The translations under genes and the position numbers were made by a program. Positions 7,040 to 41,600 of a stretch of DNA of 64,000 bases are shown one piece after another (the first letter of the stretch is position 1; each line of letters opens with the position of its first letter). The stretch is from positions 117,366,001-117,430,000 of the forward strand of contig OZ038378.1 in the NCBI GenBank assembly GCA_964036045.1. Direction: 5' to 3'. The notes under the pieces were generated by a model. It did not search any database. It saw only the letters and a list, made by a program, of their open reading frames with translations, and had not been told where the DNA came from. The DNA comes from Eutreptiella sp. 'Long Island Sound 2002'. Lineage: Eukaryota > Protista > Euglenida.

Positions 7040-7364
7040 AGACCGCGAGCGAATGCGAGCCAGTATAGGGCTACGCGGGTAGACCTGGCCTCGCCGGAAA
7101 ACAACAGTCAGGACAGGGCAAAACGCCGTGCTCACAGCACAAGGAGTCCAACGAGCATCTGAAAGCTGCCTATGGCCCTGGGAGGAGGGAGAGAGTGCCG
7201 CCTGTACGGTGGCCTTGGCTGGCTGGCTTGCATACCATCCAGATAAGGCTGCAGCGGCGTGCAGCAGGCTAGGGACCGGCTGAAGTGGGGAATCTTGTGT
7301 GTTTGTGTGTGTGCGGGCCAGCGGGCCTGATGCTGTGCGTGTGCGGGCCAGCGGGCCCGACGCA

Positions 7365-7365
<1 letters not shown>

Positions 7366-7417
<52 letters not shown>
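7366..7417. repeat. (TG)26 microsatellite
   Basis: Perfect TG run, preceded by two GTGTGCGGGCCAGCGGGCC units. Confidence 0.98.
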
Positions 7418-7420
<3 letters not shown>

Positions 7421-7489
7421 CGGTCATGAGCGCACACATGCGAAGACGCAGGGGAGCAGTGCAGATGTGTGAAGCGCGTCAAAAGGCGC

Positions 7490-8488
7490 CTATGAGGTCC
7501 CCCAAGCGGAGCGCCGTCGCTCGGCCTCGGTTGTGGCGTCACTCCATGACTCCCCGCGAAAACATCTACTCAAGGGTTCCGCAGGGTTGTAAGCGGACGG
7601 CATCCGAAACGTGGACGCCTGCGGATTGCTCCAAGCCCGCAACCAGAAAATGCGGCGGAGGAGACGGTGCTGTACAATTGAATCCGGCGCAGCCCACATC
7701 TTTGAAGCCTGGATGCGGGAGGCGCCGTTGTCGATTCCCACAGCAATTGAGTGGAAGCGGTTCCCTACTGCCACTTTCATCGCGGCGTAGGCAGCATAGA
7801 GCTCCGCCTGCTGAAGGGAAGATACCCACTTAGGGCATCGGTACGAGCGATATATACCTAGGGCCCCCACGACCCCTGCCCAGAACCCGTCGCCATCCAG
7901 CGCCGCGTCGCTGAAAAAAGTAAACGTGCGCTTGCATGCGCCTGTAGCACAGTGAAGAGCGTGTTGGGGGAAGCCCAACATAAGCGCCGTGCCCGTAGAC
8001 CTCACCATCGCGCGGGTGAACCAATGTGATCCTGCGCACATGCTTCGGTACCACCCCGCGAGGAAAGGCGCCGCTCCCGCCAACGGCCTGAGCACCCACT
8101 GCAGCCTGCCCAGCAGGCTGGCCATTTGCCTTGGGCAGATCCGTCTGCAGCCCAGCGCGTGAAGCCAGAGCCGCGTGGCCGCCATCATCATCTCCGTCGT
8201 ATTTGAGATGGACCTGGTTACAGAGTGCAGTCTTTTGCCGATGAAAGTGATGTCGGTGGTGGGCTCCATTTCTGACTTGGGGCTGATGACGAATCCCGCT
8301 CCACGTAGAGCTTGCGCCGCCGCCTGAATGGCCTGTGGCGCCACCTTCCGCGAGCGCGATGTGATCAGTACATCGTCAAGGTAGACGTGCCCGGTGGCGG
8401 AGTACCCACGCAACGCGGACGAGATGATGCCTTGTACCAGGCGTTAACAGATGACCTGAGAATCTTTCCAGCCAAATGGTAGGCTCAT
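7490..8488 (-). mobile_element. 5'-truncated RT-RNase H fragment of a tyrosine-recombinase (DIRS/Ngaro/VIPER-like) retrotransposon
   Basis: SLPFGWKDS (8485-8459, one in-frame stop follows), then VYLDD, GFVISPKS, FIG, LLGRLQW. RNase H motifs FFSDA, QQAELYAA, GIDN and NPAEPLSR are of the DIRS type. No YR or gag is visible. Confidence 0.8.
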
Positions 8489-8545
8489 CTTGGGGGTATG
8501 AACCTAACATTACGGGTCGACGGCGACCTCAAAAAAGGGCAAAAA

Positions 8546-10351
8546 GTTTCACTGTTGGCCTCCGAGGCCAGCAGTGAAACTCACACAAAAATTCAACTAT
8601 CTGCAAACCGGCTGCCGGCCCCATATTTCATATTGTTTCACTGTCAACAGTGAAACTCCAAGCGACGTGGAAGTAATTAGTTGTAATGGACCGTATCCCC
8701 ACCCCCCCACCCCTTTCAGTGTGCGGTGCCCGTGGCCGCGGACAACACTCAACCACAAACTACTTCCACCTATGACAAACACTGGCATGTCAAGGCACAA
8801 CACAAAACACAGGTACGCGTGCAAACAGTGTAGCTGCACGTGCAAAACCAAAATCTTGATGAGACCCCTGAGACTGAAAAATAACACCAGCATGCAAGAG
8901 ACTTTCAGTGTCAACAGTGAAACAGAATTTTGTAATGTGATCTCAGATGAAAAATGGAAAAAGCACCCCCCTTATCCTCCCTTATATGACCCCACTGGCA
9001 AAAATCTTATGTAACCTAAACACTATGTGGCTGCTGCAATGCAGGCAGCCCAGTGATATAAATGGACATCCTTGCAGCCCAAGAAAGCGGCTGAAGGGCA
9101 CAACACCTAACGCAAAATGGACTGTTGTTGTGACGTGTTAAAAGAAGACACAATGCACCACAGTGCACTGCCAGAAAAAAATTGTGCAGTGCGTCATCAC
9201 ATAGCACTGCAGTGACAAAAAAAAATGATGTGTGTTTTCATGCGGTGTGCACACAGGCTTCATGGCGGCTGTGTGTTTCACTGTTGACACTAAAATTGCC
9301 CTGTGATGATCCAGTCTACCAGCAAATGTTGTTAGCAGAGCAGCACCAGTACAAACATCAACGCTTACCAGAAAAGCACAACTGACAGGTCCTCCCATCC
9401 AGCCTATTGCTTTGAACTGCGCGCCCTCCGGGAAGCTTGCTCAAGCTGAGCCACATTGGGGATGCTGCCGGCAAGGACTTTCCGCTTCAACCTGGGGGCT
9501 CCTCGTCTGCCGGATTCCGCGCTGTTCGCGTCTTCAATTTGCGCTGCAATTGCTTGCTACTGGCCCTTGTCAATGTGGTGCGAATCCACCGTGTTCCGTA
9601 GGTCCATCTGGGTGAGGGTGGTTTGCTCAGTCGGCCACTTGGCACCTGCCTTGGCAAGGGGTTCGGCCTTCCCCTTCTTGTTCCTTGTTGCCTTCGCGGG
9701 AGGTGGCTTTGCATCGACACTAACGGCATTGAAGGCAGGTTCCAGGACAGCTGGGGGCACATGAACCACAAAATCGACAGCACGGGATGAGGTACCATCC
9801 GGGCAGACAGTTTCACTGTCAACAGTGAAACCTCCTTGGAGAGTCTAGTTTTTTGGAATGCTGGTGCAAGGGGACAGGGTGTCAAGGAGCTTCTGATGCT
9901 GGCTTCCTTGCCTTTGTTCATCATCGGCCTTCACACCATTCTGTTTGATTCCTCCTGCCTGTTGTGTGTGTGTGTCCATCCATGTACCGCACATTCAAAA
10001 AGGGCTAGCATGATATGATTCATGGTAGGGTTGGGCCATAAAGAACAATGCACAATTAATTTCCGTCTTTATTGTGCATCCCTTGGTAGAAGAAACCACT
10101 ACAAGTAAATGAGGAGCAGGAAGCATTATGTTGCAGCACCATTGTACACAATGTTAGTTTTAAGAACTGCTAGTTGCCTTGTGTCTTGTGTTCAACAACA
10201 GATTCAGCAAATTGAAAACAGCCAAAATAAGGTGAACCCAGTATCTTGTGTGATAGTGAAATACTAAAACTAATGCTCTAGTGACAACCAAAGGCAAATG
10301 GTCCTTTGAACCGAATCGATTGTAGCAGACTTTCACTGTTGACAGTGAAAC
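8546..10351. repeat. Six dispersed copies of the palindrome GTTTCACTGT-NN-ACAGTGAAAC
   Basis: Copies at 8546-8580 (extended 35-bp hairpin), 8635-8656 (perfect), 8902-8923, 9275-9296, 9810-9831 (perfect) and 10330-10351. Confidence 0.9.
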
Positions 10352-26111: not shown

Positions 26112-26222
26112 GTGAAATTGTTGTCTCTGCAACCTCCCTATGCCCTACACTGCGATTTCGGCGGTGGCATTTCCTCTGTCCCTCTGGAGCTGCCACGATG
26201 AGAAAAAGCCGTTTTACACTAC

Positions 26223-26660
26223 GTGAACCACTTTTATCGAGCTCAAAACTATCAGTTGGTGCGACCCGTCTTGGAAAATGCACTGGCCCCCCTGCAGGTA
26301 GACCTGAATAAAGTTGAAGTGGAATTGTTCGCGAGTAAAGAGCAGCACATGATTCAGGTCCACTGTTCGCGGTATCTCAATAACGCCTATCGCTTCTACC
26401 TGAGATCGATGGGGTTGTGCTATGCAAACCCTCCATTCTCCCAACTCGCTAAGGTGTTGACCAAAATCGCCCTTGAAGGAGCGAGAGTTGTGCTGTGCAG
26501 CCCGGAAAGGGGTTCTACAGGGGAATAAGCCTATTGGAGGTGTTTACTGCACCGTATGACAGTGGGAAGAAATGAACACTCCAACGGTTGCATCTACGTT
26601 CCTGAAGACTCTCAAGAGACTATGCCTGCCCCTAAATGGGGCAGTCTCTTGTCCATCGTT
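26223..26660 (+). pseudogene. Dam-like DNA N6-adenine methyltransferase domain within the pol of gypsy element A
   Basis: QNYQL..VEVELFASKEQH..NNAYRFY..LCYANPPFSQLAKVLTKIALEGARVVLCSP....YW. NPPF lies at 26427-26438. Same reading frame as the protease, separated only by point-mutation stops. Confidence 0.85.
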
Positions 26661-27449
26661 GATGGCTCTCTCAACCCCGTACCGGTGTGTGACCAGGAAG
26701 TGCTCAAGGAGTTGATGGCCGAAAACCGAGGCCTTACGCTCCTGGATCCCAAGAGGAGATCCGAGTACTCTTCGGTCACCACTACGAGTGGTGAGTGCTA
26801 CCATGAGCAGAGACTCACGTAGTCCCTACTCGTGTGGCTGATGCTGATGACAACCTAAGTGAGATCTTCAGCTCAATACCGCCCGTGCATCCGGAGGTGT
26901 TGACTTTGTAGCATAGCGCGTTCCTAGCGCAACTGCTTATGGAAGAGGTGGATCTTGGTGAGTCCACCTCTGATGGGTCTCATGACCACGCTGTGTTCTC
27001 AATGCGGGCCTTAGATGGCCCTATAGGTTAGGTACCTGACGCTAAACACTCACCCAACAACATACCCGTCTCTAAGCACGATGTGCGAACCCTTCAACAG
27101 GTCCTGTGGGCTAAGGCTGAGGGTATCAAGCGACGGACCCGCCTGGACCTCCTCAAGGGGACGTGGAAAACCTCGATATGGTCCGAGGAGGATGATGAGG
27201 TGATGACTCTCCCGTATCCTGAAACATCCCTGGTATACTGCCTTCACTATGCCCAGCAGGGTTGCCACGACTAGGAGGATGCATTGCCCCCCGAAACTAT
27301 GGGTCGCATCAAGAAACAGGAAAAAGAAAAGAGCAGCCTCCCCGCTGAGGAGTATTTTTCTGAGAAACTTCAGGGCATGAACCTTGACTCTAGTCTCACT
27401 AAGGTCATCAAGGAATATCAGGAGGTTTTTCGGGGCGTTGCCCCCACCC

Positions 27450-31177: not shown

Positions 31178-32999
31178 TGTAAGAAGAATAACTAATCTCC
31201 TTGTGCCTATCTATTTGTTGCTCCTAACCGAACTGAGGTGGTTGCAAGCTTCAGAAGGCAGTGGCACTACCTGGACATTCCCTCTTCCCATAGGGAGTCT
31301 CTTTCGCCCCATGCCTGCAGGCGTATTGGCTCCTGGAGGTGCACTTGCCCCCCACGAAGGGAGGCAACACTGGGGGTCGTCGGAATACCACCAGGCCGCT
31401 TTTCAGGTTTGTAGCCCAATGGTCGTGAGTTCTACTACCCCATCCTCCCACCGTGCCATCATCTTGCACTGTGTAGTACCAAGAACGCGCCCACGCGTTG
31501 GAGTAGGTACCCTTGGGGTCAGTTCAGTTCTGGATTTCCACCTCCTTACGACCACCTCAACTGCGGGTCACCTGAACACGCCGGCCTACGTGAACGGGTT
31601 CCCTCGCTTCGGAACTCACAATTGAGGGCCCTTACTCGCAAACCCCTCTGTCTTAGGTGGGCACTCTTGTGCTGACAACTAGGCCTAATCAACGTGTGCC
31701 TTGACAGGTTCAGGACTCATGTAGAGCTCGAGTTTCAGTGAGTGTACTAACGCCCACCCTCTTTCAGGTTTGGTTTTTCACCCATGTCCACATGCGCTGC
31801 TTTAAGAGCCCTGCCCCTGCCTTGGTGGTGCCCTGCACTCCCATGCCGATGGTTACCAGCATGTGCCAGATGGCCGGTTATCAGGTTTGCAGCCACCCAG
31901 CGAGTGAGTGCCTTGTTGACCACGTGTGGCATGGGATGTGCCCTAGTGTGATAACCTTTGGGGAGCCAACGATAAGCGGTGGAATTTCAATTATTGATTC
32001 AGAGGACCCGTTGGCAACGTTTGTTGCCCTTGAGTGGCGAAACCCGTCCCCATATCATTCGTAGGCAGCTGCCAAGCAAGCTCCCTGGCATAAAAAAAAA
32101 AGGTGTTGGAGGAAGAGGCCAATGCAACCCTTAGTAGTGTTTTGGTCAATTTCAGTGGGGTGGACCCTTCGGCGGGTTGCAACTAGTTTGAATATGAAAT
32201 CCAGACGTTTTCAATCTGAGTATCCCTTCACCTCTCCAACCACTATTGCACTATTTGGGCGGGGGGGGGGGGGTAGTGGTTCACTATAAGCATGGGCGGT
32301 CGATGTCCAAAATTCCGGCCCTAACAAACACGCCTAACACCGATGGCTAAACCATGAAGGTGGAGCAATGTCAGCCCCGTTTGGACCCGGACCCTATCAG
32401 TAACCTGGGCCATACAGAGGTTGCTGAGAAAAAATCTCTCGAACGCCTAATGCAGGGAGATAAACAGATAGTTACCTACACTCGGGTCCTTCATCCCGGA
32501 TAACTGCGGTATATTCGGTTCATTCCAACTCCTCGGCGAAGCACGCTCCTACAGACTTGTCCGTTGCAAAGAAAACTACAAAGCAAGAATCCACAAACGG
32601 GTGAACAGCACCGGGGGGGGGGAAACAAGCCATACCCGGGGTATCGGCTAACCCCTCTTACACCCCCGATGCGCATAACTCATCCCCTTCGCACATATCT
32701 TCATTGGTTTCGTGCCGCACACCTTGGAAAAAACAGAGAGCAACAGACATGGACTAGTGCATTGATTGGGTTCCACCAATGGAACCAATTGAGACACCAT
32801 CAAAATTGTCGCGGCATCCCTAGCAATTCATCCTGGCGCACCTAAAGATTTCTCCTATGTGCAAGGTCTGCGATCTATAATTCACAGAAATAACAATTTT
32901 CTTGCACCGCTGAACCACAATGGTATCAAAATCATTAAGATCTGTTCTGATGAAGACAACCGCAACCGTGAAAACAGCTCTGCGGCAGTACCAATTACC

Positions 33000-35900
33000 A
33001 CTACCACCAACGCATCTGAAAAAGGTCCTCTCCATACCGGCCTAAGACCTTTTGAACTACTGGTATTTATTATCTCTCAATTCAAACCTTCGCCACAAAG
33101 CCGCACTCATAGACTGCAAACGTAAAAACCGCTGTCGCTACGGTGCAAGATGTTGGCTTTGTCATTAACAATCCACCGCTCAACACACCTTTTGCACGGT
33201 TTTTTTGCAATTCAGATTCCGCAGATTCAAAAACTGATGTATCTCGGCAGCCACAAGATTCTGGTAACCCTCTAGTGCCCTTGATAGCTGCAAAAGCCAG
33301 GCCAGAGTCCACATTATCCGAAATGAACATTTATCCTCGGTGAAAAGGCTCTTTCGCACCACATGAAGATCAATGGACAATAGCCTCCAAGAGAAGTCAT
33401 TGGACACCTTCAAGAATACGACATACCGGGTTAGATGATGAAATGCCGTCTTGTAAGGATTGCAAGAATACCTTTGCACTTAGCGATGAAATTGCTAACG
33501 GATCTCTAACCAGAGGTTTGAATCTGCCACTAGGTTGCCGTGACTCTCAACTGAAGAGAAAAACATCTCGAGATTCACGCAAACCCAGTTAAGCAATTCA
33601 ATCATAAAGTGTCGTTTGTCCCCAACGGCACGTGTCCAATTCCAAACAAAAACTACTCAAAGTTCAACCACCATGTTGTGCCGTACCTGTCAAAACGTTT
33701 TTCTAGTCCGGACAACAAAGTCAGGTGAACGTCAATCGCTCAAAGTAAAGGCCTGGGACTCCGCGCCATCAAGCAGTTCCTCTTCAAGCCACGATTTACT
33801 GTGAAACCGCTCAAAGATACTGGTCCGAACCACATGGAAAACATGAATATGATGATTCACTCGCTCGAAAACAGTTCTGGGACGTCAACTTTCCGGCATC
33901 TAACGGGTATAACGAATGTGGTAGATCCAAGTCTCGAGATGAAGCGGACTCCGTAGGTCATTCAACAAGCCACCAAAGTCTGGAAGAGTCTTCATCCGAA
34001 GAATCCACCACATCAAAAAGAAGATCTCAGCAGGCTAAGCACATCAAGCTTCGGACGTTTAAAAATTGGGTTGGTCTAAAAGATCAAAGGCTGCTTCTGA
34101 ACCTGAAGCACGCACTTCTCAATGAAGATTCACCGCCCCTCCTCAAGGCTTGGACTTGGGCCCAATGCGCTCAACATCAATACAAACATTTGTCACACTC
34201 TACTGACATGATCGATCTTGTCGTACGAAAGATAACACGCTCAAAACAGCACCGGATGCAGAAACACCACGGCCTTGGTTTTGCATGCTGTCTTGGGTTG
34301 GGGATATTTGTAAATTGGGTGTCATTTGCTTTTCAAGCTCGTGTTTTTGGCCCAAGTTGTTCGTCGGCTTTCTTCCCTGAATCTACCTCAATGGCCATCT
34401 GGTTTTTGTTTTTTAACAAACACAATAACTTCAGGACAGCTTGGATGTGTTTGATTTAAAGCAGGCCAATGAAACCAGCTGTGATCAGAGCTCGTGATCA
34501 TTTTCAAGTCGATGGTGCCACAGGGAGTGCTCGGCACACTATATTGAAATCTTTTGTCAGCACTTCAAGTCAAGACTTTGGTTCCATCAGGCAGCGCTTT
34601 GTGCCCTGGTGTGCTGTATACAAAGTTGCTGTCCGTCGGTTGAACTTCGGCTCACCAAGCACGCTTTTCCCTTGGTTAGGCCGCCTTTTTCATACTCTTG
34701 GGCGGGAAACTGCCATGCCTCGACAAAAAAATTGAACTAATTGAGTATGCAAACCCAAATCCGCATGTAATGACTGGGATTGGGCACTCTCCAAAAAAGA
34801 AGATGGTGTTGTCAACAGAGGTAAAGGCAAAGGGCCTAAAGGTGGTAAGAACAAAAGCAGGGCAGGCAACAAACGGGAGAAAAGCGCGTCGCAGGGACGT
34901 GGAAGCTATAACTAGGAGTGCTGAGAGGCGCTCCCTTTTGGAAAGAGAACCCCTGGAGCATCGTTGTAACACTCTTCGGGCTCTCGTGCCCGCGACAATC
35001 CCCCAAGGGCATATTGTATATAGTAACATTCGAACCGAACTATCAGTTCGGATTGTTCTGCTGAAAAGAGACTTGCGTGCCCTAGTGGATTTTGGGTTCC
35101 AAGAGCCCACATTGGCGAACCCAAATGCTTTAGGCGATCAAATTTTTGAAAACCTTATCTTCCTTGTTCAAAGGCGCCTCGTACAGGCAACTAATAGGAC
35201 AACTTTGCCGGGGGGGATGAACAAATTGATGCAAAAATCCATTTTACGGGAGTTACGGATGAGAATGTTTCGCTTCCTTAGGTTGCGCAATACAGTGTGT
35301 CCCGATATTTGGTGCCGGACCTGCCATGGGACATGGTGTATGGGTACCCGTAGCGTCGTGCGCATTGTCCGAGCGATTTTGCTGGTTTTATTTGTTTGTA
35401 TTCACACCACCCCGTGCAACCCCGTTTTTGGATTGCAGATTTTTGCAAAACTCCACGAACCGGCAAACTGGTGTCGGTCAAACCCATTCAAAGTAAAGTG
35501 TCACATCGAACGCCCTGGAAATAACCGTTCTAGTCATTGGGGCGTTGGTACCCACCCTCTAGATGCCTGCTATTGTGATGGAGCCTCCTAATGGGGAGCC
35601 ACCGAGCCCAACTATCGCCGAAAAGCAAGTTTTCTACGCTTTTATGGCTTTGTCAGTGGCCCTTGTACCAAATCGTGCCTGTGCTTTGGAGCTCGTAGAA
35701 TTTGTTCCTCAGACCATCTCTCGTGCTGTCCTACCAACACGGCGTGATTGGTCCATTTCGAAGCACTCTGACTACAAGGTCACTGCATAGTGCGCCAGGT
35801 GGGTCGCAAAGCAATTTGGCACAAACCGTGAAGTGGACATCTTCAACATGGTCCAGGGATTGGCCCAAGCCACTCTCGTCGTGTGACATGGTGATGATTT

Positions 35901-37360
35901 CTTCTTAACACCCGCAAACCGCTCCAGATTGTATTGGATGTGTCCACCCCATCATCGGTTGTCCGATTGTGTCGGGAAAGTTTGGCTTGAGGAACTACGA
36001 GCTATGGTTGTAGGGCCGCAACGGACAAATAGGGAGTGGTGGCAACCTCTTATTGGGTTTCTCTTGCAACCGTACCATCTCCTTGGGCCCGAAACCAAAG
36101 CCTGCCTGGATCAGGATTCCTAGCTCACGCTCCTTCCTCAACGTAAATGGTCCATGGTGGTTGTACATGTGGACAGAGGGCTTGCCGAGGAAAGTTTGGT
36201 GGCCAGTAAATGTCGTGTGGCCTCCGCCGTTCCTAACATTGACACGGATGATGAGCTGGGTACAACCTTGGAGGAGGAGTTGGAGAAGGACAGGGTGCCT
36301 AACCACCCGGTTGCTGTGTGTTCCCTCACGTAGCAAACAACTCATAAAAAACTCCGGGCCCCCGCTACTCTTGACTCTAGTCCGGAAGATTTGGAGGCCC
36401 AAAAATGCGTGCTTCAGGCATTGCCAAAATTGAAACAGCGTTTTTGCCAGGAGGTACCGCTTCCGTGAAGCACTGCCAGAAAACTAATGGTGCCAAGCGT
36501 TTGTTGGCTGCTTCCGGTGTGGGTGGTGTGGTTGGCATCCAAAAGCCTATGACGTCTCCGGAGGTGGAACTCATGAGAAAACGTATCCTCGCTGTCTATC
36601 AGCGGGATGTGTTTAGTGGGGAGGTTCGCCTACGTCCGGGCCAGACACACCCTAAATTCCATGGCCCGGATGCTATTGGGTTCACCAAACTTGAGCTACA
36701 CCCGGGTGCTAAGTCGAAGTCCGTGAAACAAATAAGATTCGTTACCGCGGTTGAGTTAGAAATTGCGGAGGATTTCTTGGCTCATGGATGGATTGAGCCA
36801 TGTGTTGCCACCGGGTGGCCATCAAATGGTTTCCGGGTGCCCGAGAATGAAAAAGGGTAATGGCAACTCGTTGCTGCCTATCGCCAACTCAGTGAGGCTA
36901 CTATGCCCGACGCGCACCCCCCCCCCTCATTGAAATAAGATTTTCACTATTGTGGACTTGACGAAAGGTTTTCACCAAAATGCACTTGCCCCAGAGTCCC
37001 GGGTTAAGACCAGAGTGAATTTGGTGGGAAAGAGATACCAGCCGCGTGTTATGCCTATGGGTATCAAAAATGGCCATCTATTTTTCAACGGGTCATGGAC
37101 AACATTTTGAGGGGGTCGGATAGTGCCGAAGTATATTTTGATGAAAGAATTATTGGTTCTTCTGGTGATGCGGAGGAGGAACTTTTGGCAACTCACACAA
37201 CCGCGATGTGCGGGTCGTGTTGGATTTGCTACAGAGGGAGGAACTTGTGGCTTTGGTTAGTAAAACCGATTTCCTTGTCCGTTCGGTGGAGTTTTTTAGA
37301 TGTATCCACAGTACGTGAACCATGTGTCCCGACGTTTGAGGAGTTCCAGGATTTCTTTGG
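33000..37360 (+). mobile_element. Second, divergent and more decayed Ty3/gypsy remnant B (gag-like, PR-like, N6MTase-like, RT), 3'-truncated
   Basis: Degraded protease-like LEITVLV.GA at about 35515. RT motifs WPSNGFRVP..KG*WQLVAAYRQL..ATMPDAHP (36815-36925), VMPMGIKNG..FFQRVMDNIL and VYFDE (37045-37145). Both boundaries are approximate. Confidence 0.7.
35761..36180 (+). pseudogene. Divergent N6-adenine methyltransferase-like domain in the pol of gypsy remnant B
   Basis: SDYKV..REVDIFN..DDFF..LYWMCPPHHRLSDCVGKVWLEELRAMVVGP..EWWQPL..LPQRKWSMVVVHVD is colinear with the element A domain. Motif IV reads CPPH (35941-35952). Confidence 0.6.
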
Positions 37361-38612: not shown

Positions 38613-41600
38613 CTAGTGCTCCGCTGTTCGTGCGGCTCTCATGGCTGGGGGCCTTTCTGCCTTCTCTGACCCCTCCGCAGCGTGGCCGTCTTGGTGCAAC
38701 AGCGCACTGCGCTGCAGGGTGTCGTCAATCACGCCATGAAAGCCCTCAGGCCGCCAAATGTGCACCCACGCCGCAGATAATACAAATAGCCCAATGGCGA
38801 GCCCGGGCCCAAGTACCAGGGTCTGCATGCTCAAATGGGCGCAGGCGATGAGGTTCGCCACGCAGAACAGCGCCGGAAAGAGCACCAAGAGAGACATCCC
38901 GACAGGGCCCACAGGGATTTGGTACGGTCGCTCGAGGCTCGGGTAACGGAACCGGAGGAGGGGAAGGGCTATGAGGACAAACAGGAGGCGGGCAGCATAG
39001 AAGAACGAGGAGACAGTGACCAGCTCGGAGAAGTCCAAGAAGACACTGAAGACTGCAGTGAGAACAGAGATAAAAACGATGGAGACGGTGGGAATGCCCC
39101 TGGCACTGATGTACCCCATGGCACGATTCAATGGTCTGGGAAAGAGCCCCATGATCGCCATGGAGGAGGTGGCACGCGCAGTAGCACAGAGGTACGAAAG
39201 CAGCAGTCCAAAGCCGCTGCAGACCCCCCCAATGGCCATGATGAACTCAAGCCACTCACCACCAATCTGAGGAGGGCAGCGGAGAATTCAGAGGGTTGAT
39301 GCAGAAATTGTGCGGTAGAGAAATGGGGGATGAGATTATTCAGGGGTTCAGTATCAATTCTCAGGCCAGGAGGGCTGTTGTACTACCTACCCCTACGCCT
39401 GGGGTGCACTACACACTGGATCACGGAATAAATACCACGCATAGCAATTTACACAAACATACATAGCAAATTACACAATGCACTTACTACGCACTCGCTA
39501 CATGTCTACCAATTGTACACATGTAACTGCTGTTACAAAACGTTTTCCGGAAGGGGTCCTTTGGTCCCATTCCTAGATAGTGTCTGTGTGCGTCTACACC
39601 ATGTGCACACATTCGTTACATGTGCACAGTGTGTACAATTGTATGCAGGTAAGCATATGTGTGTGTGGTGTCTGCAAACTTTTTTCCTCGATCTTTACTA
39701 CACACAGAAGCATAGTGACAAAACTACTGCTCTGCAGGCCAGAGTAGAAAAGGCCTAGGCCATGGGGCTTTGGCACAAGCAAAGGGTGCATGGGCTCCGG
39801 ATGGCCCTGGATGGTTCTTCAATGTGTGCCAATGACAGATTCTGTTGCAAAGAGGGAACAAGGGTCGGCTGGAAACGTGGTTGGCCGTTGCTGCATGCTC
39901 CAACATTGTTGGTGTGGGGAGGGTACCTTTTTCAGATGCACCCAAGCCTGTCCAAACAACGCAAACCCCTCCCAAAGACCAACTTCTCCGATGGGATGGA
40001 TATTGTGAATGGCCTTGTGAAACTGATGGAAAAATTGTTGTTCCTGCCCTTTTGCAGCCTTATATACAATGGGTTTTGCAAATGGCCCTAACTCAGACTA
40101 AATTGAAAAATTATATTTGGGGGGTCTTTGAGTGAGCACCAGGCCAGTAGGGACAACAGGCAGGCTTTGTGGGTCCGTTGCCCTCGCAATCACCACCAGC
40201 TGATTTTCATTGCGAGTAGTTGAAGTTTAATTTAGGGCATTGGTGGGCAGCCACCATGTGAATGCCTGAAAGGGTTCTCTGGACGGCAGATTGGCAGTCA
40301 CGCGAGCAGCCACCAAGACTTGGAACACCCTTTAAATGACGCCCCTGACACGCCCCAATTCATAAGGCAGATTTTTTTTATTGTAGCAACATGTTGCATA
40401 CCTAGAGCTGCTGGGAATTGGTGCTTCATGTGAGTGCATGGGGGCCCCCTCTGGAGCAAAGCATAGCTCGATCGTGGAAATAAGTGTAACTCGCTGTTTT
40501 ATTTTTTTTTTGGCGTAAGTCGCGTAACTTTTTTTTTTGGCGTAAGTCGCGGGTTTTTTTGGACGGAAATTTTTTTTTGGTGTAAGTCGCGTAAACTTTT
40601 TTTTTTTGGTGTAAGCAGCGTATGGGGAAAAAACCCCTTTTTTCAAAAAAAAATAAAAAAAGGGGGGGGGGGCGGAGAAACACAAGAACCACCCAACAAC
40701 TGCCATTGCTACCAGAGGAGGTGAAGCATGCAGCCCCCACGGACATTTCGGGTACCTTGGGCATGGGTAAAGCAATGGAGCCGTGAGCTTGAAGGGCGGC
40801 AGATGGCAGAAATAACGTGTAGCACACTCATCATGACTGCAAACAAAAAATGCAATTTGCCCTTCGGCCTTTGGCAAGCGGTATCAAAATGACTATATTG
40901 CTGCCGGCGCCACTGGCTACGAAGCCCAAGCCAGTGATACCACCTAAGTCCGGTCACCTCGGGCCAACTACATTCTTCGCATGCAACCATAAGGGCGTAG
41001 GGCCAACTACAAGAAGTCGCCGAACACACGCTTGTAGATCAAAGCAGTCTTTGTGTCCGATGCCTTCGGCTTTGCACCCGGATTCGTGTTCCGCGCACAA
41101 GCGCCACAAATATCCTTCACAAGTAACTCTTCCAGCTCTCGAATAAATTGTTGGTCATTCACCAACCGACCCTCTGCGCCCTTTGGGTACGCCTCGGGCA
41201 CCTCGACAAGCTTCCCACGGATGAACACGTATGCACGGGCATCATCACTTGTGGGGAGGTTAGAAGAGGAAGTGGACTGCAGGGTTTGTGGAGGGGCCTT
41301 CACATTGCCCTTCACTGACTTCCTATTTTGGGGCACGTCCTCATAGTTGGAGGCCGGGCAGGCAGGAGATTGTCCGACAATTGGCTCCGAGGAGGAAAGA
41401 GGATCCTCTTCATCAAAAAGGAGGGGGGAAGTAGATGGGGGCGGGGACTCACAGTTGGAGGCTGGGGCAGGAGGAGATTCTCCAGGCTCCCAGAAAATCA
41501 CCTCCCCCTCCCACCCATTCTCCGGGATGGTACCGGGGACTCGGAGGGGGCGATCTGCATTGATGATGCGTAGTGCTTCCTTGATGAATCCTTTCAGCAA

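What the first reader, a model, noticed from the sequence alone, without database searches (positions are those of the whole stretch)
35500..37350. A second, divergent gypsy family has the same MTase-like domain at the same position, with motif IV changed to CPPH
Seen: between a degraded protease-like motif and RT lies SDYKV..VDIFN..DDFF..YWMCPPH.RL..CV.KVWLEELRAMVVGP..WW..LP.RKWS...VD. It is colinear, motif by motif, with the element A domain, while the surrounding DNA shows no evident similarity to element A. Inference: the PR-MT-RT architecture is ancestral to a diversified clade rather than a one-off capture. AAT to TGT needs two changes, so CPPH may be a real family variant (altered chemistry, or a catalytically dead DNA-binding form) rather than decay.
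Basis: partly seen in the sequence, partly recalled or inferred. Interest (0 to 1): 0.8.

Follow-up and report, generated by a model that had tools for sequence, protein, structure and literature searches.

The report
Jumping gene with altered methylase domain
This is a dead, cut-off copy of a young, very abundant Euglena jumping gene whose methylase-like domain has a cysteine in place of the usual key asparagine; selection keeps that domain, so it probably no longer works as a normal DNA-adenine methylase.

Summary
The motif string is real. Window 35689-36225 (+) holds a decayed, frame-intact copy (3 stops) of a Dam/DIRS-type methyltransferase-like domain. It lies between a retropepsin-fold protease and RT in a truncated Ty3/gypsy chromovirus copy (32009-37295) of Euglena gracilis.

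Homology to element A's domain holds at profile level (hhalign 99.6%, E 7e-25). The AlphaFold model (pLDDT 90) matches N6-adenine methyltransferases best (PCIF1 Z 9.9; KsgA/Erm; T4/E. coli Dam).

The variant claim is half right.
- Cys is the family state: the genome has 741 YWMCPPY sites, 0 YWMNPPY and 15 YWMCPPH.
- The window's His is copy-level decay.

Young copies are about 99% alike, with LTR pairs 99.7-100% identical and open frames of 1658 aa. Their MT domain is as constrained as RT (pN/pS 0.09 against 0.11). The Cys type forms one deep clade (CPPY and CGPY families) in both the domain and RT trees. Motif I is remodelled too, and Pfam Dam does not detect the clade.

The PR-MT-RT architecture was published in a May 2026 preprint, Euglena included. 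This scan also found it on other DNA of this genome. New here is a selected, non-canonical catalytic motif. Joint ancestry of A and B is not shown: their RTs are only 28-30% identical.

The parts
32009..32483 (+). Remnant of the 3' part of ORF1 of the family-B element, in two blastn pieces (32009-32180 and 32327-32483). ORF1 is 1413 aa in intact copies and has no Pfam match.
   Evidence: blastn to the intact copy G000:C2:69121770 onward, 67-69% identity. ORF1 has no Pfam family.
34918..37295 (+). 5' part of ORF2 (pol) of the family-B copy: protease, MT-like domain and RT. Homology stops at 37295, just after the RT core, so RNase H, integrase, chromodomain and the 3' LTR are missing.
   Evidence: blastn at 72.8% identity over 2448 columns to intact-copy positions 7197-9631. 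Frameshifting indels and stops are listed.
34990..35440 (+). Retropepsin-fold protease region. The active-site position reads LVDFGFQ (35082-35102), and intact copies also read D-F-G there.
   Evidence: An AlphaFold model of the intact counterpart (L003:957-1484; pLDDT 78, core above 90) matches Ddi1 and retroviral proteases, Foldseek E 4e-5. Pfam finds nothing. Window coordinates are approximate, mapped from the alignment.
35689..36225 (+). Dam/DIRS-type methyltransferase-like domain, 179 codons. It is decayed (stops at 35788, 35884, 36121) but has no frameshift.
   Evidence: tblastn with the intact B domain: 61% identity, E 1.6e-68, no gaps.
35833..35847 (+). Motif I-like strand end, VDIFN. 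It reads VDAFNR in intact B copies and VDAFAS in canonical relatives.
   Evidence: Alignment A1 and the column comparison.
35932..35952 (+). Motif IV, YWMCPPH. The Cys codon is TGT at 35941-35943. The His codon is CAT at 35950-35952 and reads TAT (Tyr) in the family.
   Evidence: Genome counts: CPPY 741, NPPY 0, CPPH 15.
36786..37295 (+). Reverse transcriptase core, decayed. YxDD reads YFDE at 37134-37157.
   Evidence: Translation. The intact counterpart matches Pfam RVT_1 at E 5.9e-36.
26202..26819 (+). Element A's Dam-like domain, used for comparison. NPPF is at 26427-26438, and there is a stop at 26526.
   Evidence: Weak Pfam Dam match, E 0.019. It is the first row of A3 in the hhalign comparison.

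Best explanation
The segment is a dead, 3'-truncated copy of a Ty3/gypsy chromovirus-type LTR retrotransposon of Euglena gracilis. An intact element is about 12.9 kb, has LTRs of about 350 bp and carries two ORFs. ORF1 is 1413 aa and of unknown function. ORF2 is 1658 aa and runs protease, MT-like domain, RT, RNase H, integrase, chromodomain.

The MT-like domain descends from the Dam (PF05869)/DIRS 'MT' module that several Euglena retrotransposon lineages carry. In this lineage the motif IV asparagine of NPP(F/Y) became cysteine, giving CPPY. In canonical enzymes that asparagine positions the adenine N6. The small residues of the motif I-like strand end changed as well (A-S to N-R), and several other positions that canonical members conserve in the N-terminal half also changed. 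The fold-defining residues of the C-terminal half were kept.

Shown here:
- homology to the Dam-like family;
- an N6-adenine methyltransferase fold;
- fixation of Cys in about 740 copies;
- recent activity of the family;
- purifying selection on the domain as strong as on RT.

Inferred: with both the catalytic and the cofactor motifs remodelled, the domain most likely no longer methylates adenine N6 in the canonical way. It would be retained as a non-catalytic part of Pol, either as a nucleic-acid or cofactor binding module or as a structural module needed for polyprotein function. The analogy is the inactive METTL14 subunit. The window's CPPH is simply this family motif after a Tyr-to-His decay mutation in a dead copy.

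The confidence given (0.55) is for the inferred non-catalytic reading. The shown points (identity of the element, homology, Cys as the family state, selection) I hold at about 0.95.
For: Family and copy state:
- The window copy is about 73% identical to more than 1000 candidate copies.
- 29 held copies are about 99% alike and all read YWMCPPY.
- 21 of 29 are open for at least 1300 aa, and 27 of 29 have the MT domain open.
- LTR pairs are 99.7% and 100% identical.
- Dozens of open frames of 1658 aa occur genome-wide.
- Genome counts are YWMCPPY 741, YWMNPPY 0 and YWMCPPH 15.

Homology:
- phmmer of the intact domain reaches NPPF proteins at E 2e-14.
- 38 of 48 aligned members hit Pfam Dam (best E 8.5e-13), and 7 hit PCIF1's methyltransferase region.
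- hhalign against the element-A-like clade gives 99.6%, E 7.4e-25.

Fold:
- The AlphaFold2 model has pLDDT 90 and pTM 0.86.
- Best matches are PCIF1 (Foldseek E 4e-4; Z 9.3-9.9), then Erm/KsgA (Z 8-8.9), T4 Dam 7.9, E. coli Dam 7.8 and M.TaqI 7.6.

Selection:
- Among young copies pN/pS is 0.09 for MT, 0.11 for RT and 0.3-0.4 for the linkers.
- The MT domain has 17 synonymous against 10 nonsynonymous or stop variants, P 7e-6 against neutrality.
- Window copy against a young copy gives dN/dS 0.40 for MT.
- B against the CGPY family keeps 32% MT identity at 54% RT identity. The median for canonical pairs is 28%.

Loss of canonical chemistry:
- The changed columns are A53N, S54R, N57G/A, R60Q, F61A, W65V and N85C. 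D50, F52, W83, P86, P87, K97, P110, W112, W117, W154 and D162 are kept.
- PCIF1 N553A, the same asparagine in the closest structural match, is catalytically dead (PMC9178792).
- Sister Euglena families with fully degenerate motifs (HGSL, HCPR, CGPY) are also high-copy, with open frames up to 1588-1688 aa. The module can therefore be kept without the motif.
- Even canonical eukaryotic DAM domains gave no 6mA when expressed in E. coli (preprint).
Against: - No biochemical test exists; inactivity is inferred from motifs only.
- Pro-Pro-Tyr and the preceding Trp are kept and selected, which a purely structural role does not obviously require.
- Cys is isosteric with Ser, and S-P-P-(Y/F) is a working motif IV in N4-cytosine and some amino-methyltransferases (textbook knowledge, not tested here). 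A path N to S to C by single-base steps is possible, and SPPY/SPPF members exist in the family.
- I had no model coordinates, so I could not check whether Arg54 or Cys85 really line the cofactor pocket.
- The excess of synonymous variants could be inflated by CpG-biased mutation in this heavily CpG-methylated genome, although the linkers of the same copies show less excess.
Confidence: 0.55

Rival explanations
1. CPPY is a working active site. Cys would act like the Ser of SPPY-type amino-methyltransferases, so the domain would still transfer methyl groups. The target might be changed, for example another exocyclic amine, a cDNA/RNA hybrid or the element's own capped RNA.
For: - Selection on the domain is as strong as on RT.
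- W-x-C-P-P-Y is kept in 741 copies and across a deep clade.
- D50, F52 and K97 are kept.
- The closest fold is PCIF1, an RNA-cap and ssDNA adenine methylase.
- SPPY/SPPF variants exist in the family.
Against: - The motif I-like positions changed to bulky or charged residues across the whole clade.
- The sister CGPY family breaks the Pro-Pro pair and is still intact.
- Related Euglena families keep the domain with no motif IV at all.
- The Asn-to-Ala mutant of PCIF1 is dead.
- To my knowledge no characterised amino-methyltransferase has Cys at this position (from memory, not searched exhaustively).
Confidence: 0.3
2. CPPH/CPPY is plain decay of a formerly canonical domain. The family would carry a dying module that no longer matters.
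For: - The window copy itself is dead (3 stops in the domain, frameshifts elsewhere).
- Pfam Dam no longer recognises the domain.
- The closest RT relatives P0157 and P0158 have lost the motif I half, and P0156 shows no domain.
Against: - 27 of 29 young copies have the domain open.
- pN/pS is 0.09, as low as RT, and the synonymous excess has P 7e-6.
- The confident AlphaFold model has pLDDT 90.
- Nearly invariant fold residues are kept.
- Divergence from the CGPY family is no faster than among canonical domains.
Confidence: 0.05
3. A and B acquired the domain separately, by module exchange between retroelement lineages, rather than inheriting PR-MT-RT from a common gypsy ancestor. This concerns ancestry only and is compatible with any of the functional readings above.
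For: - A's RT is only 28-30% identical to B and to all 120 B relatives, which share 42-54% with B.
- A's domain falls in another major branch of the domain tree. That branch also holds elements with the domain after RNase H and a DIRS-like one.
- The preprint infers at least four DIRS-to-LTR transfers and mixed Euglena clades.
Against: - The insertion point, between protease and RT, is the same in both.
- The domain lies upstream of RT in most lineages of B's RT supergroup, including early branches.
- The set was B-centred, so A's own RT relatives were not sampled.
Confidence: 0.5

Closest known systems
[quoted passage not shown]
   Same: A Ty3/gypsy-type LTR element, with a chromodomain, that carries a prokaryote-derived Dam-like domain, in the same host species. 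The domain family is the same (profile links).
   Different: - The preprint reports that the catalytic Asn-Pro-Pro triplet is preserved in almost all DAMs and does not mention Cys. Family B has Cys fixed.
- Family B gets no Pfam Dam hit even at E 10. A screen at E 1e-5 would probably miss it. That last point is my inference.
MT domain of DIRS1-like tyrosine-recombinase retrotransposons (PMC3266345; function stated there as unknown)
   Same: A homologous domain with the DxFA...NPPF...P.W....WW motif series. DIRS-like members such as P0087 are hit by the B domain.
   Different: In DIRS the order is RT-RNase H-MT and the element uses a tyrosine recombinase. Here the domain sits between protease and RT in an integrase/chromodomain LTR element, and the Asn is replaced.
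Pfam PF05869, phage/bacterial DNA N-6-adenine-methyltransferase (Dam)
   Same: Canonical relatives of the B domain match it (38 of 48, best E 8.5e-13). The motif order is the same.
   Different: B itself is below detection. The catalytic Asn and the motif I small residues are replaced.
PCIF1/CAPAM, cap-specific adenosine N6-methyltransferase (PDB 6irx, 6irz)
   Same: It is the best structural match (Z 9.3-9.9, 124-138 residues). It has an NPPF motif, and 7 family members hit Pfam PCIF1_WW.
   Different: Sequence identity is 12-14%. PCIF1 has extra helical and WW domains. Its Asn553 is essential, whereas B has Cys there.
METTL14, the inactive partner of METTL3 (EPPL instead of DPPW; from general knowledge, not tested here)
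   Same: It is a precedent for an N6-adenine methyltransferase fold that lost its catalytic motif and is kept by selection as a nucleic-acid-binding scaffold.
   Different: It belongs to a different family (MT-A70) and is a cellular gene, not part of a retrotransposon polyprotein. The analogy is functional only.

Membership tests
Ty3/gypsy (Metaviridae-like) chromovirus-type LTR retrotransposon | LTRs flank an internal region | tested here: met
   Intact copies have direct repeats of 345-351 bp about 12.5 kb apart, 99.7-100% identical. The window copy itself has lost both ends.
Ty3/gypsy (Metaviridae-like) chromovirus-type LTR retrotransposon | pol order is PR-RT-RNase H-integrase, with a C-terminal chromodomain | tested here: met
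   Pfam finds RVT_1, RT_RNaseH, Integrase_H2C2, rve and Chromo in that order. The PR fold was shown by the model. The extra MT-like domain lies between PR and RT.
Dam-like domain family (PF05869 / eukaryotic DAM-TE domain) | Significant sequence or profile similarity to the family | tested here: met
   phmmer reaches NPPF members at E 2e-14. hhalign gives 99.6%, E 7.4e-25. The direct Pfam hit fails, so the link is transitive.
Dam-like domain family (PF05869 / eukaryotic DAM-TE domain) | Class I (Rossmann-like) SAM-methyltransferase fold of the N6-adenine type | tested here: met
   The model has pLDDT 90. The top matches are PCIF1, Erm/KsgA, T4 Dam, E. coli Dam and M.TaqI, at Z 7.6-9.9.
Catalytically competent N6-adenine methyltransferase | Motif IV reads (D/N)PP(Y/F/W) | tested here: not met
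   The family reads CPPY (741 sites, no NPPY). The window copy reads CPPH. The first position is Asn in 39 of 40 canonical relatives.
Catalytically competent N6-adenine methyltransferase | Motif I-like cofactor loop with small residues after D-x-F | tested here: not met
   A53/S54 (82% and 60% in canonical members) are N/R in B and N, L, K / R, C, A, M across the Cys clade. Assigning these positions to the SAM loop is an inference from Dam-type motif I, not from coordinates.
Catalytically competent N6-adenine methyltransferase | SAM binding and methyl transfer shown | not testable with these tools
   This needs biochemistry. The preprint found no activity even for canonical eukaryotic DAMs in E. 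coli.
DIRS1-like retrotransposon | Tyrosine recombinase, and the order RT-RNase H-MT | tested here: not met
   The element has a DDE integrase (rve) and a chromodomain, and the MT domain lies upstream of RT.

The most novel reading that the evidence does not exclude
The Cys-type domain is a new functional class of retrotransposon-encoded 'pseudo-' or neo-methyltransferase. It would have arisen at least twice from Dam-like modules and been kept by selection in very successful Euglena elements. It would either act with changed chemistry or target (a Ser-like or thiol-assisted active site), or act as a reader or binder of nucleic acid or cofactor that helps the element cope with the host's 6mA/5mC chromatin.
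Probability: 0.2. Interest if true: 0.75.

Novelty: new variant of a known kind. Interest (0 to 1): 0.5.

Why it matters
The only study of these elements argues that retrotransposon DAM domains keep an intact catalytic pocket and serve to write 6mA. This finding qualifies that view.

A young family of about 740 copies has the key asparagine replaced, yet its domain is as constrained as RT. Sister families in the same genome (CGPY, HGSL, HCPR) keep the domain with even less of the motif. So at least part of the module's value to the element does not depend on canonical adenine methylation. Pfam-based screens also undercount such elements.

The finding offers natural matched pairs in one host, NPPF against CPPY against motif-less, for testing what the long-unexplained DIRS/DAM 'MT' domain actually does.

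Tried and rejected
- Pfam scans of the window pieces and of the intact B domain gave no Dam hit.
- A PDB sequence search with the family profile gave nothing at E 1 or better.
- Direct pairwise comparison of A and B is weak: BLASTP E 8e-5 over 32 residues and tblastn E 0.5. Profile methods were therefore needed.
I did not try another route. A was therefore represented by its window copy, as pieces or with X at stops.
- The listing of cluster members gave no organism names for the metagenomic relatives, so the host range of the Cys clade outside E. gracilis is unknown. One ENA assembly (ERZ25074135) was shown to be this genome.
- The sequencing runs were held only as contigs. Contigs from RNA libraries cover the domain, including the Cys codon, but DNA carry-over cannot be excluded. 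Transcription is therefore not shown.
All counts use real copies, pairwise comparisons or pattern counts.
- I rejected the idea that CPPH is the family state and the idea that the domain is decaying in the family.
Full report
**What is there.** The window comes from Euglena gracilis. Earlier notes say so, and an ENA assembly matches this genome at 100%. It has three stops (35788, 35884, 36121) and no frameshift. A protease-like motif, LVDFGFQ (35082-35102), lies upstream. A decayed RT lies downstream, with YFDE at 37134-37157.

blastn against an intact relative shows what the window holds. It has only a relic of the ORF1 end (32009-32483) and the first 2.4 kb of ORF2 (34918-37295), at about 73% identity. 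Everything past the RT core is missing. The next feature is a host amino-acid-permease exon on the other strand.

**The family.** The segment finds more than 1000 candidate copies in the genome. The 29 copies I could hold are about 99% alike. 21 of them are open for at least 1300 aa across the held 4.8 kb.

Two copies taken with their flanks define an element of about 12.9 kb. Its LTRs are 345-351 bp and are 99.7% and 100% identical within the element. The family has therefore been active very recently.
- ORF1 is 1413 aa and has no Pfam match.
- ORF2 is 1658 aa and carries RVT_1, RT_RNaseH, Integrase_H2C2, rve and Chromo.
- Its N-terminal 176 residues, invisible to Pfam, fold into a retropepsin (AlphaFold pLDDT 78, core above 90). 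Foldseek matches Ddi1 and retroviral proteases at E 4e-5.

The order PR, MT-like domain, RT, RNase H, integrase, chromodomain is therefore established for family B.

**Is the domain the same as element A's, and is it a methyltransferase relative?** Direct A-to-B similarity is marginal, and Pfam Dam does not see B even at E 10. Four other lines settle the question.
- phmmer of the intact B domain against 1.84 billion representatives gives 209 hits. Proteins reading VDAFAS...LLW(I/M)NPPF...AILVVP.W....WW appear from E 2e-14.
- In a 48-member alignment (A1), 38 members hit PF05869 Dam (best E 8.5e-13) and 7 hit the PCIF1 methyltransferase region.
- A profile of the Cys clade against a profile headed by the window's element-A piece gives hhalign 99.6%, E 7.4e-25, over 145 columns.
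- The AlphaFold2 model of the B domain is confident (pLDDT 90, pTM 0.86). Its best solved matches are all N6-adenine methyltransferases: PCIF1/CAPAM (Foldseek E 4e-4; VIA-align Z 9.3-9.9), Erm and KsgA/Dim1 (Z 8-8.9), T4 Dam 7.9, E. coli Dam 7.8 and M.TaqI 7.6.

The homology is real.

**CPPH or CPPY?** All 29 held copies read YWMCPPY with identical DNA. Genome-wide pattern counts are:
- YWMCPPY, 741 sites (control 1);
- YWMNPPY, 0 sites;
- YWMCPPH, 15 sites.

The window's spelling (TGT CCA CCC CAT) is unique. It differs from the family's TGC CCT CCC TAT by synonymous changes plus the Tyr-to-His change. The second refutation test, that the copies restore NPP(Y/F), also fails. Cys is the family state. 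His is not.

**Is the Cys-type domain decaying or maintained?** It is maintained.
- Among the young copies pairwise pN/pS is 0.09 in the MT domain, 0.11 in RT and 0.3-0.4 in the linkers.
- Distinct single-base variants in the MT domain are 17 synonymous against 10 nonsynonymous or stop. Neutrality predicts 77% nonsynonymous, so P is 7e-6.
- The old window copy against a young copy still gives dN/dS 0.40 in MT (0.24 in RT), despite the relic's neutral decay.
- In the domain tree the Cys type is one well-supported deep clade (SH-aLRT 95 and 98). It holds B, a 55%-identical low-copy family (P0004), P0018 and a CGPY family (P0036/P0160).
- The RT tree independently groups B with the CGPY family (support 99). 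Domain and RT have therefore travelled together since the change.
- The CGPY family has at least 14 near-identical copies, with open frames up to 1588 aa.
- At 54% RT identity B and CGPY keep 32% MT identity. That is no less than canonical NPPF pairs keep (median 28%).
- A second, separate Cys group (CPPF/CPPP) lies elsewhere in both trees. The replacement therefore happened at least twice.

**What changed besides Asn?** I compared 40 canonical members with the 8 Cys-clade members, column by column. The clade keeps D50, F52, W83, P86, P87, K97, P110, W112, W117, W154 and D162. It changes A53 to N, S54 to R, N57 to G/A, R60 to Q, F61 to A, W65 to V and N85 to C, and in the B sub-lineage W76 and L82 as well.

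The changes cluster in the N-terminal half. By analogy with the Dam-type D-x-F-x-G-x-G motif, that half forms the cofactor loop. This assignment is my inference; I had no model coordinates.

In PCIF1, the closest structure, Asn553-to-Ala is a dead enzyme (PMC9178792). In the same genome two further high-copy families carry the domain with no motif IV at all. They read HGSL and HCPR, each has at least 150 copies, and their open frames reach 1673-1688 aa. The closest RT relatives of B include forms that have lost the motif I half.

Together this points to a module whose retained value is not canonical adenine-N6 methylation. A Ser-like working site cannot be excluded.

**Architecture and ancestry.** Of 125 relatives of B's RT-RNase H scanned, 109 had enough N-terminus to judge. 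65 of these have the domain upstream of RT, 8 have it downstream and 36 show none. The upstream state occurs in most major branches of the RT tree. Within this supergroup the PR-MT-RT order is widespread and plausibly old.

Element A is another matter. Its RT is only 28-30% identical to all of these. Its domain lies in a different major branch, beside elements with the domain after RNase H and a DIRS-like one. Shared ancestry of A and B is therefore not shown. Module exchange, as the preprint proposes, is at least as likely.

**What is already known.** bioRxiv 10.64898/2026.05.21.726589 (May 2026) describes DAM-LTR elements, E. gracilis included. It reports that the Asn-Pro-Pro triplet is preserved in almost all DAMs, and that no 6mA activity appeared in E. 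coli. It screened with hmmsearch at E 1e-5 and does not mention Cys.

This scan has met the architecture before on other DNA of this genome (s1-191370, s1-199724). It has also met one altered motif, NPRF (s1-202938).

**Limits.**
- The organisms of most metagenomic relatives are unknown.
- Transcription is not shown. RNA-library contigs cover the domain, but DNA carry-over is possible.

**Verdict.** The element is a new variant (Cys-type, apparently non-canonical, selected) of a recently described kind.

Noticed in passing
L003:957-1484 (intact family-B copy); window 35082-35102: The retropepsin of family B reads D-F-G at the active-site position instead of D-T/S-G, in intact young copies as well as in the window relic. 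Pfam does not recognise the domain, although the fold is clearly that of a retroviral protease.
   Followed up: partly
L031:2953-7191 (G000:C2:69121952-69126190): ORF1 of family B is an open frame of 1413 aa with no Pfam family and a Gly/Lys-rich tail. That is far longer than a usual gypsy gag.
   Followed up: partly
G000, families represented by P0239 (HGSL), P0228/P0208 (HCPR) and P0160 (CGPY): Three other E. gracilis gypsy families keep the Dam-like domain upstream of RT with a degenerate or absent motif IV. HGSL and HCPR each have at least 150 copies, and CGPY has at least 14. Their open frames reach 1588-1688 aa.
   Followed up: partly
window 32484-34917: About 2.4 kb lies between the ORF1 remnant and ORF2 of the window copy, where intact elements have about 450 bp. 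It is probably a later insertion or an unalignable stretch. I did not identify it.
   Followed up: no
window 38616-39239 (-): An open frame matches Pfam AA_permease_2 (E 1.8e-8). It is probably an exon of a host amino-acid permease gene, just beyond the truncated end of the element.
   Followed up: partly
L033:4306-9931 (G000:C2:69133305-69138930): One intact B copy has a tandem duplication in its 3' non-coding part, upstream of the 3' LTR (3.1-kb blocks overlapping with a 2534-bp period, 99.5% identical). Two other copies lack it.
   Followed up: no
P0251 (NCBI 'hypothetical protein M569_03701 [Genlisea aurea]'): A protein filed under a carnivorous plant carries the same Dam-like domain (NPPF) upstream of a B-like RT. 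Either the architecture occurs in a land-plant assembly, or that assembly contains protist contamination.
   Followed up: no
P0162, P0175, P0176, P0189, P0195, P0206, P0226, P0253, P0256, P0258, P0269: Many RT relatives of family B also carry a cytosine DNA methyltransferase (PF00145). Some carry Dam and a chromodomain as well. These match the 'EpiLTR' elements of the preprint.
   Followed up: no
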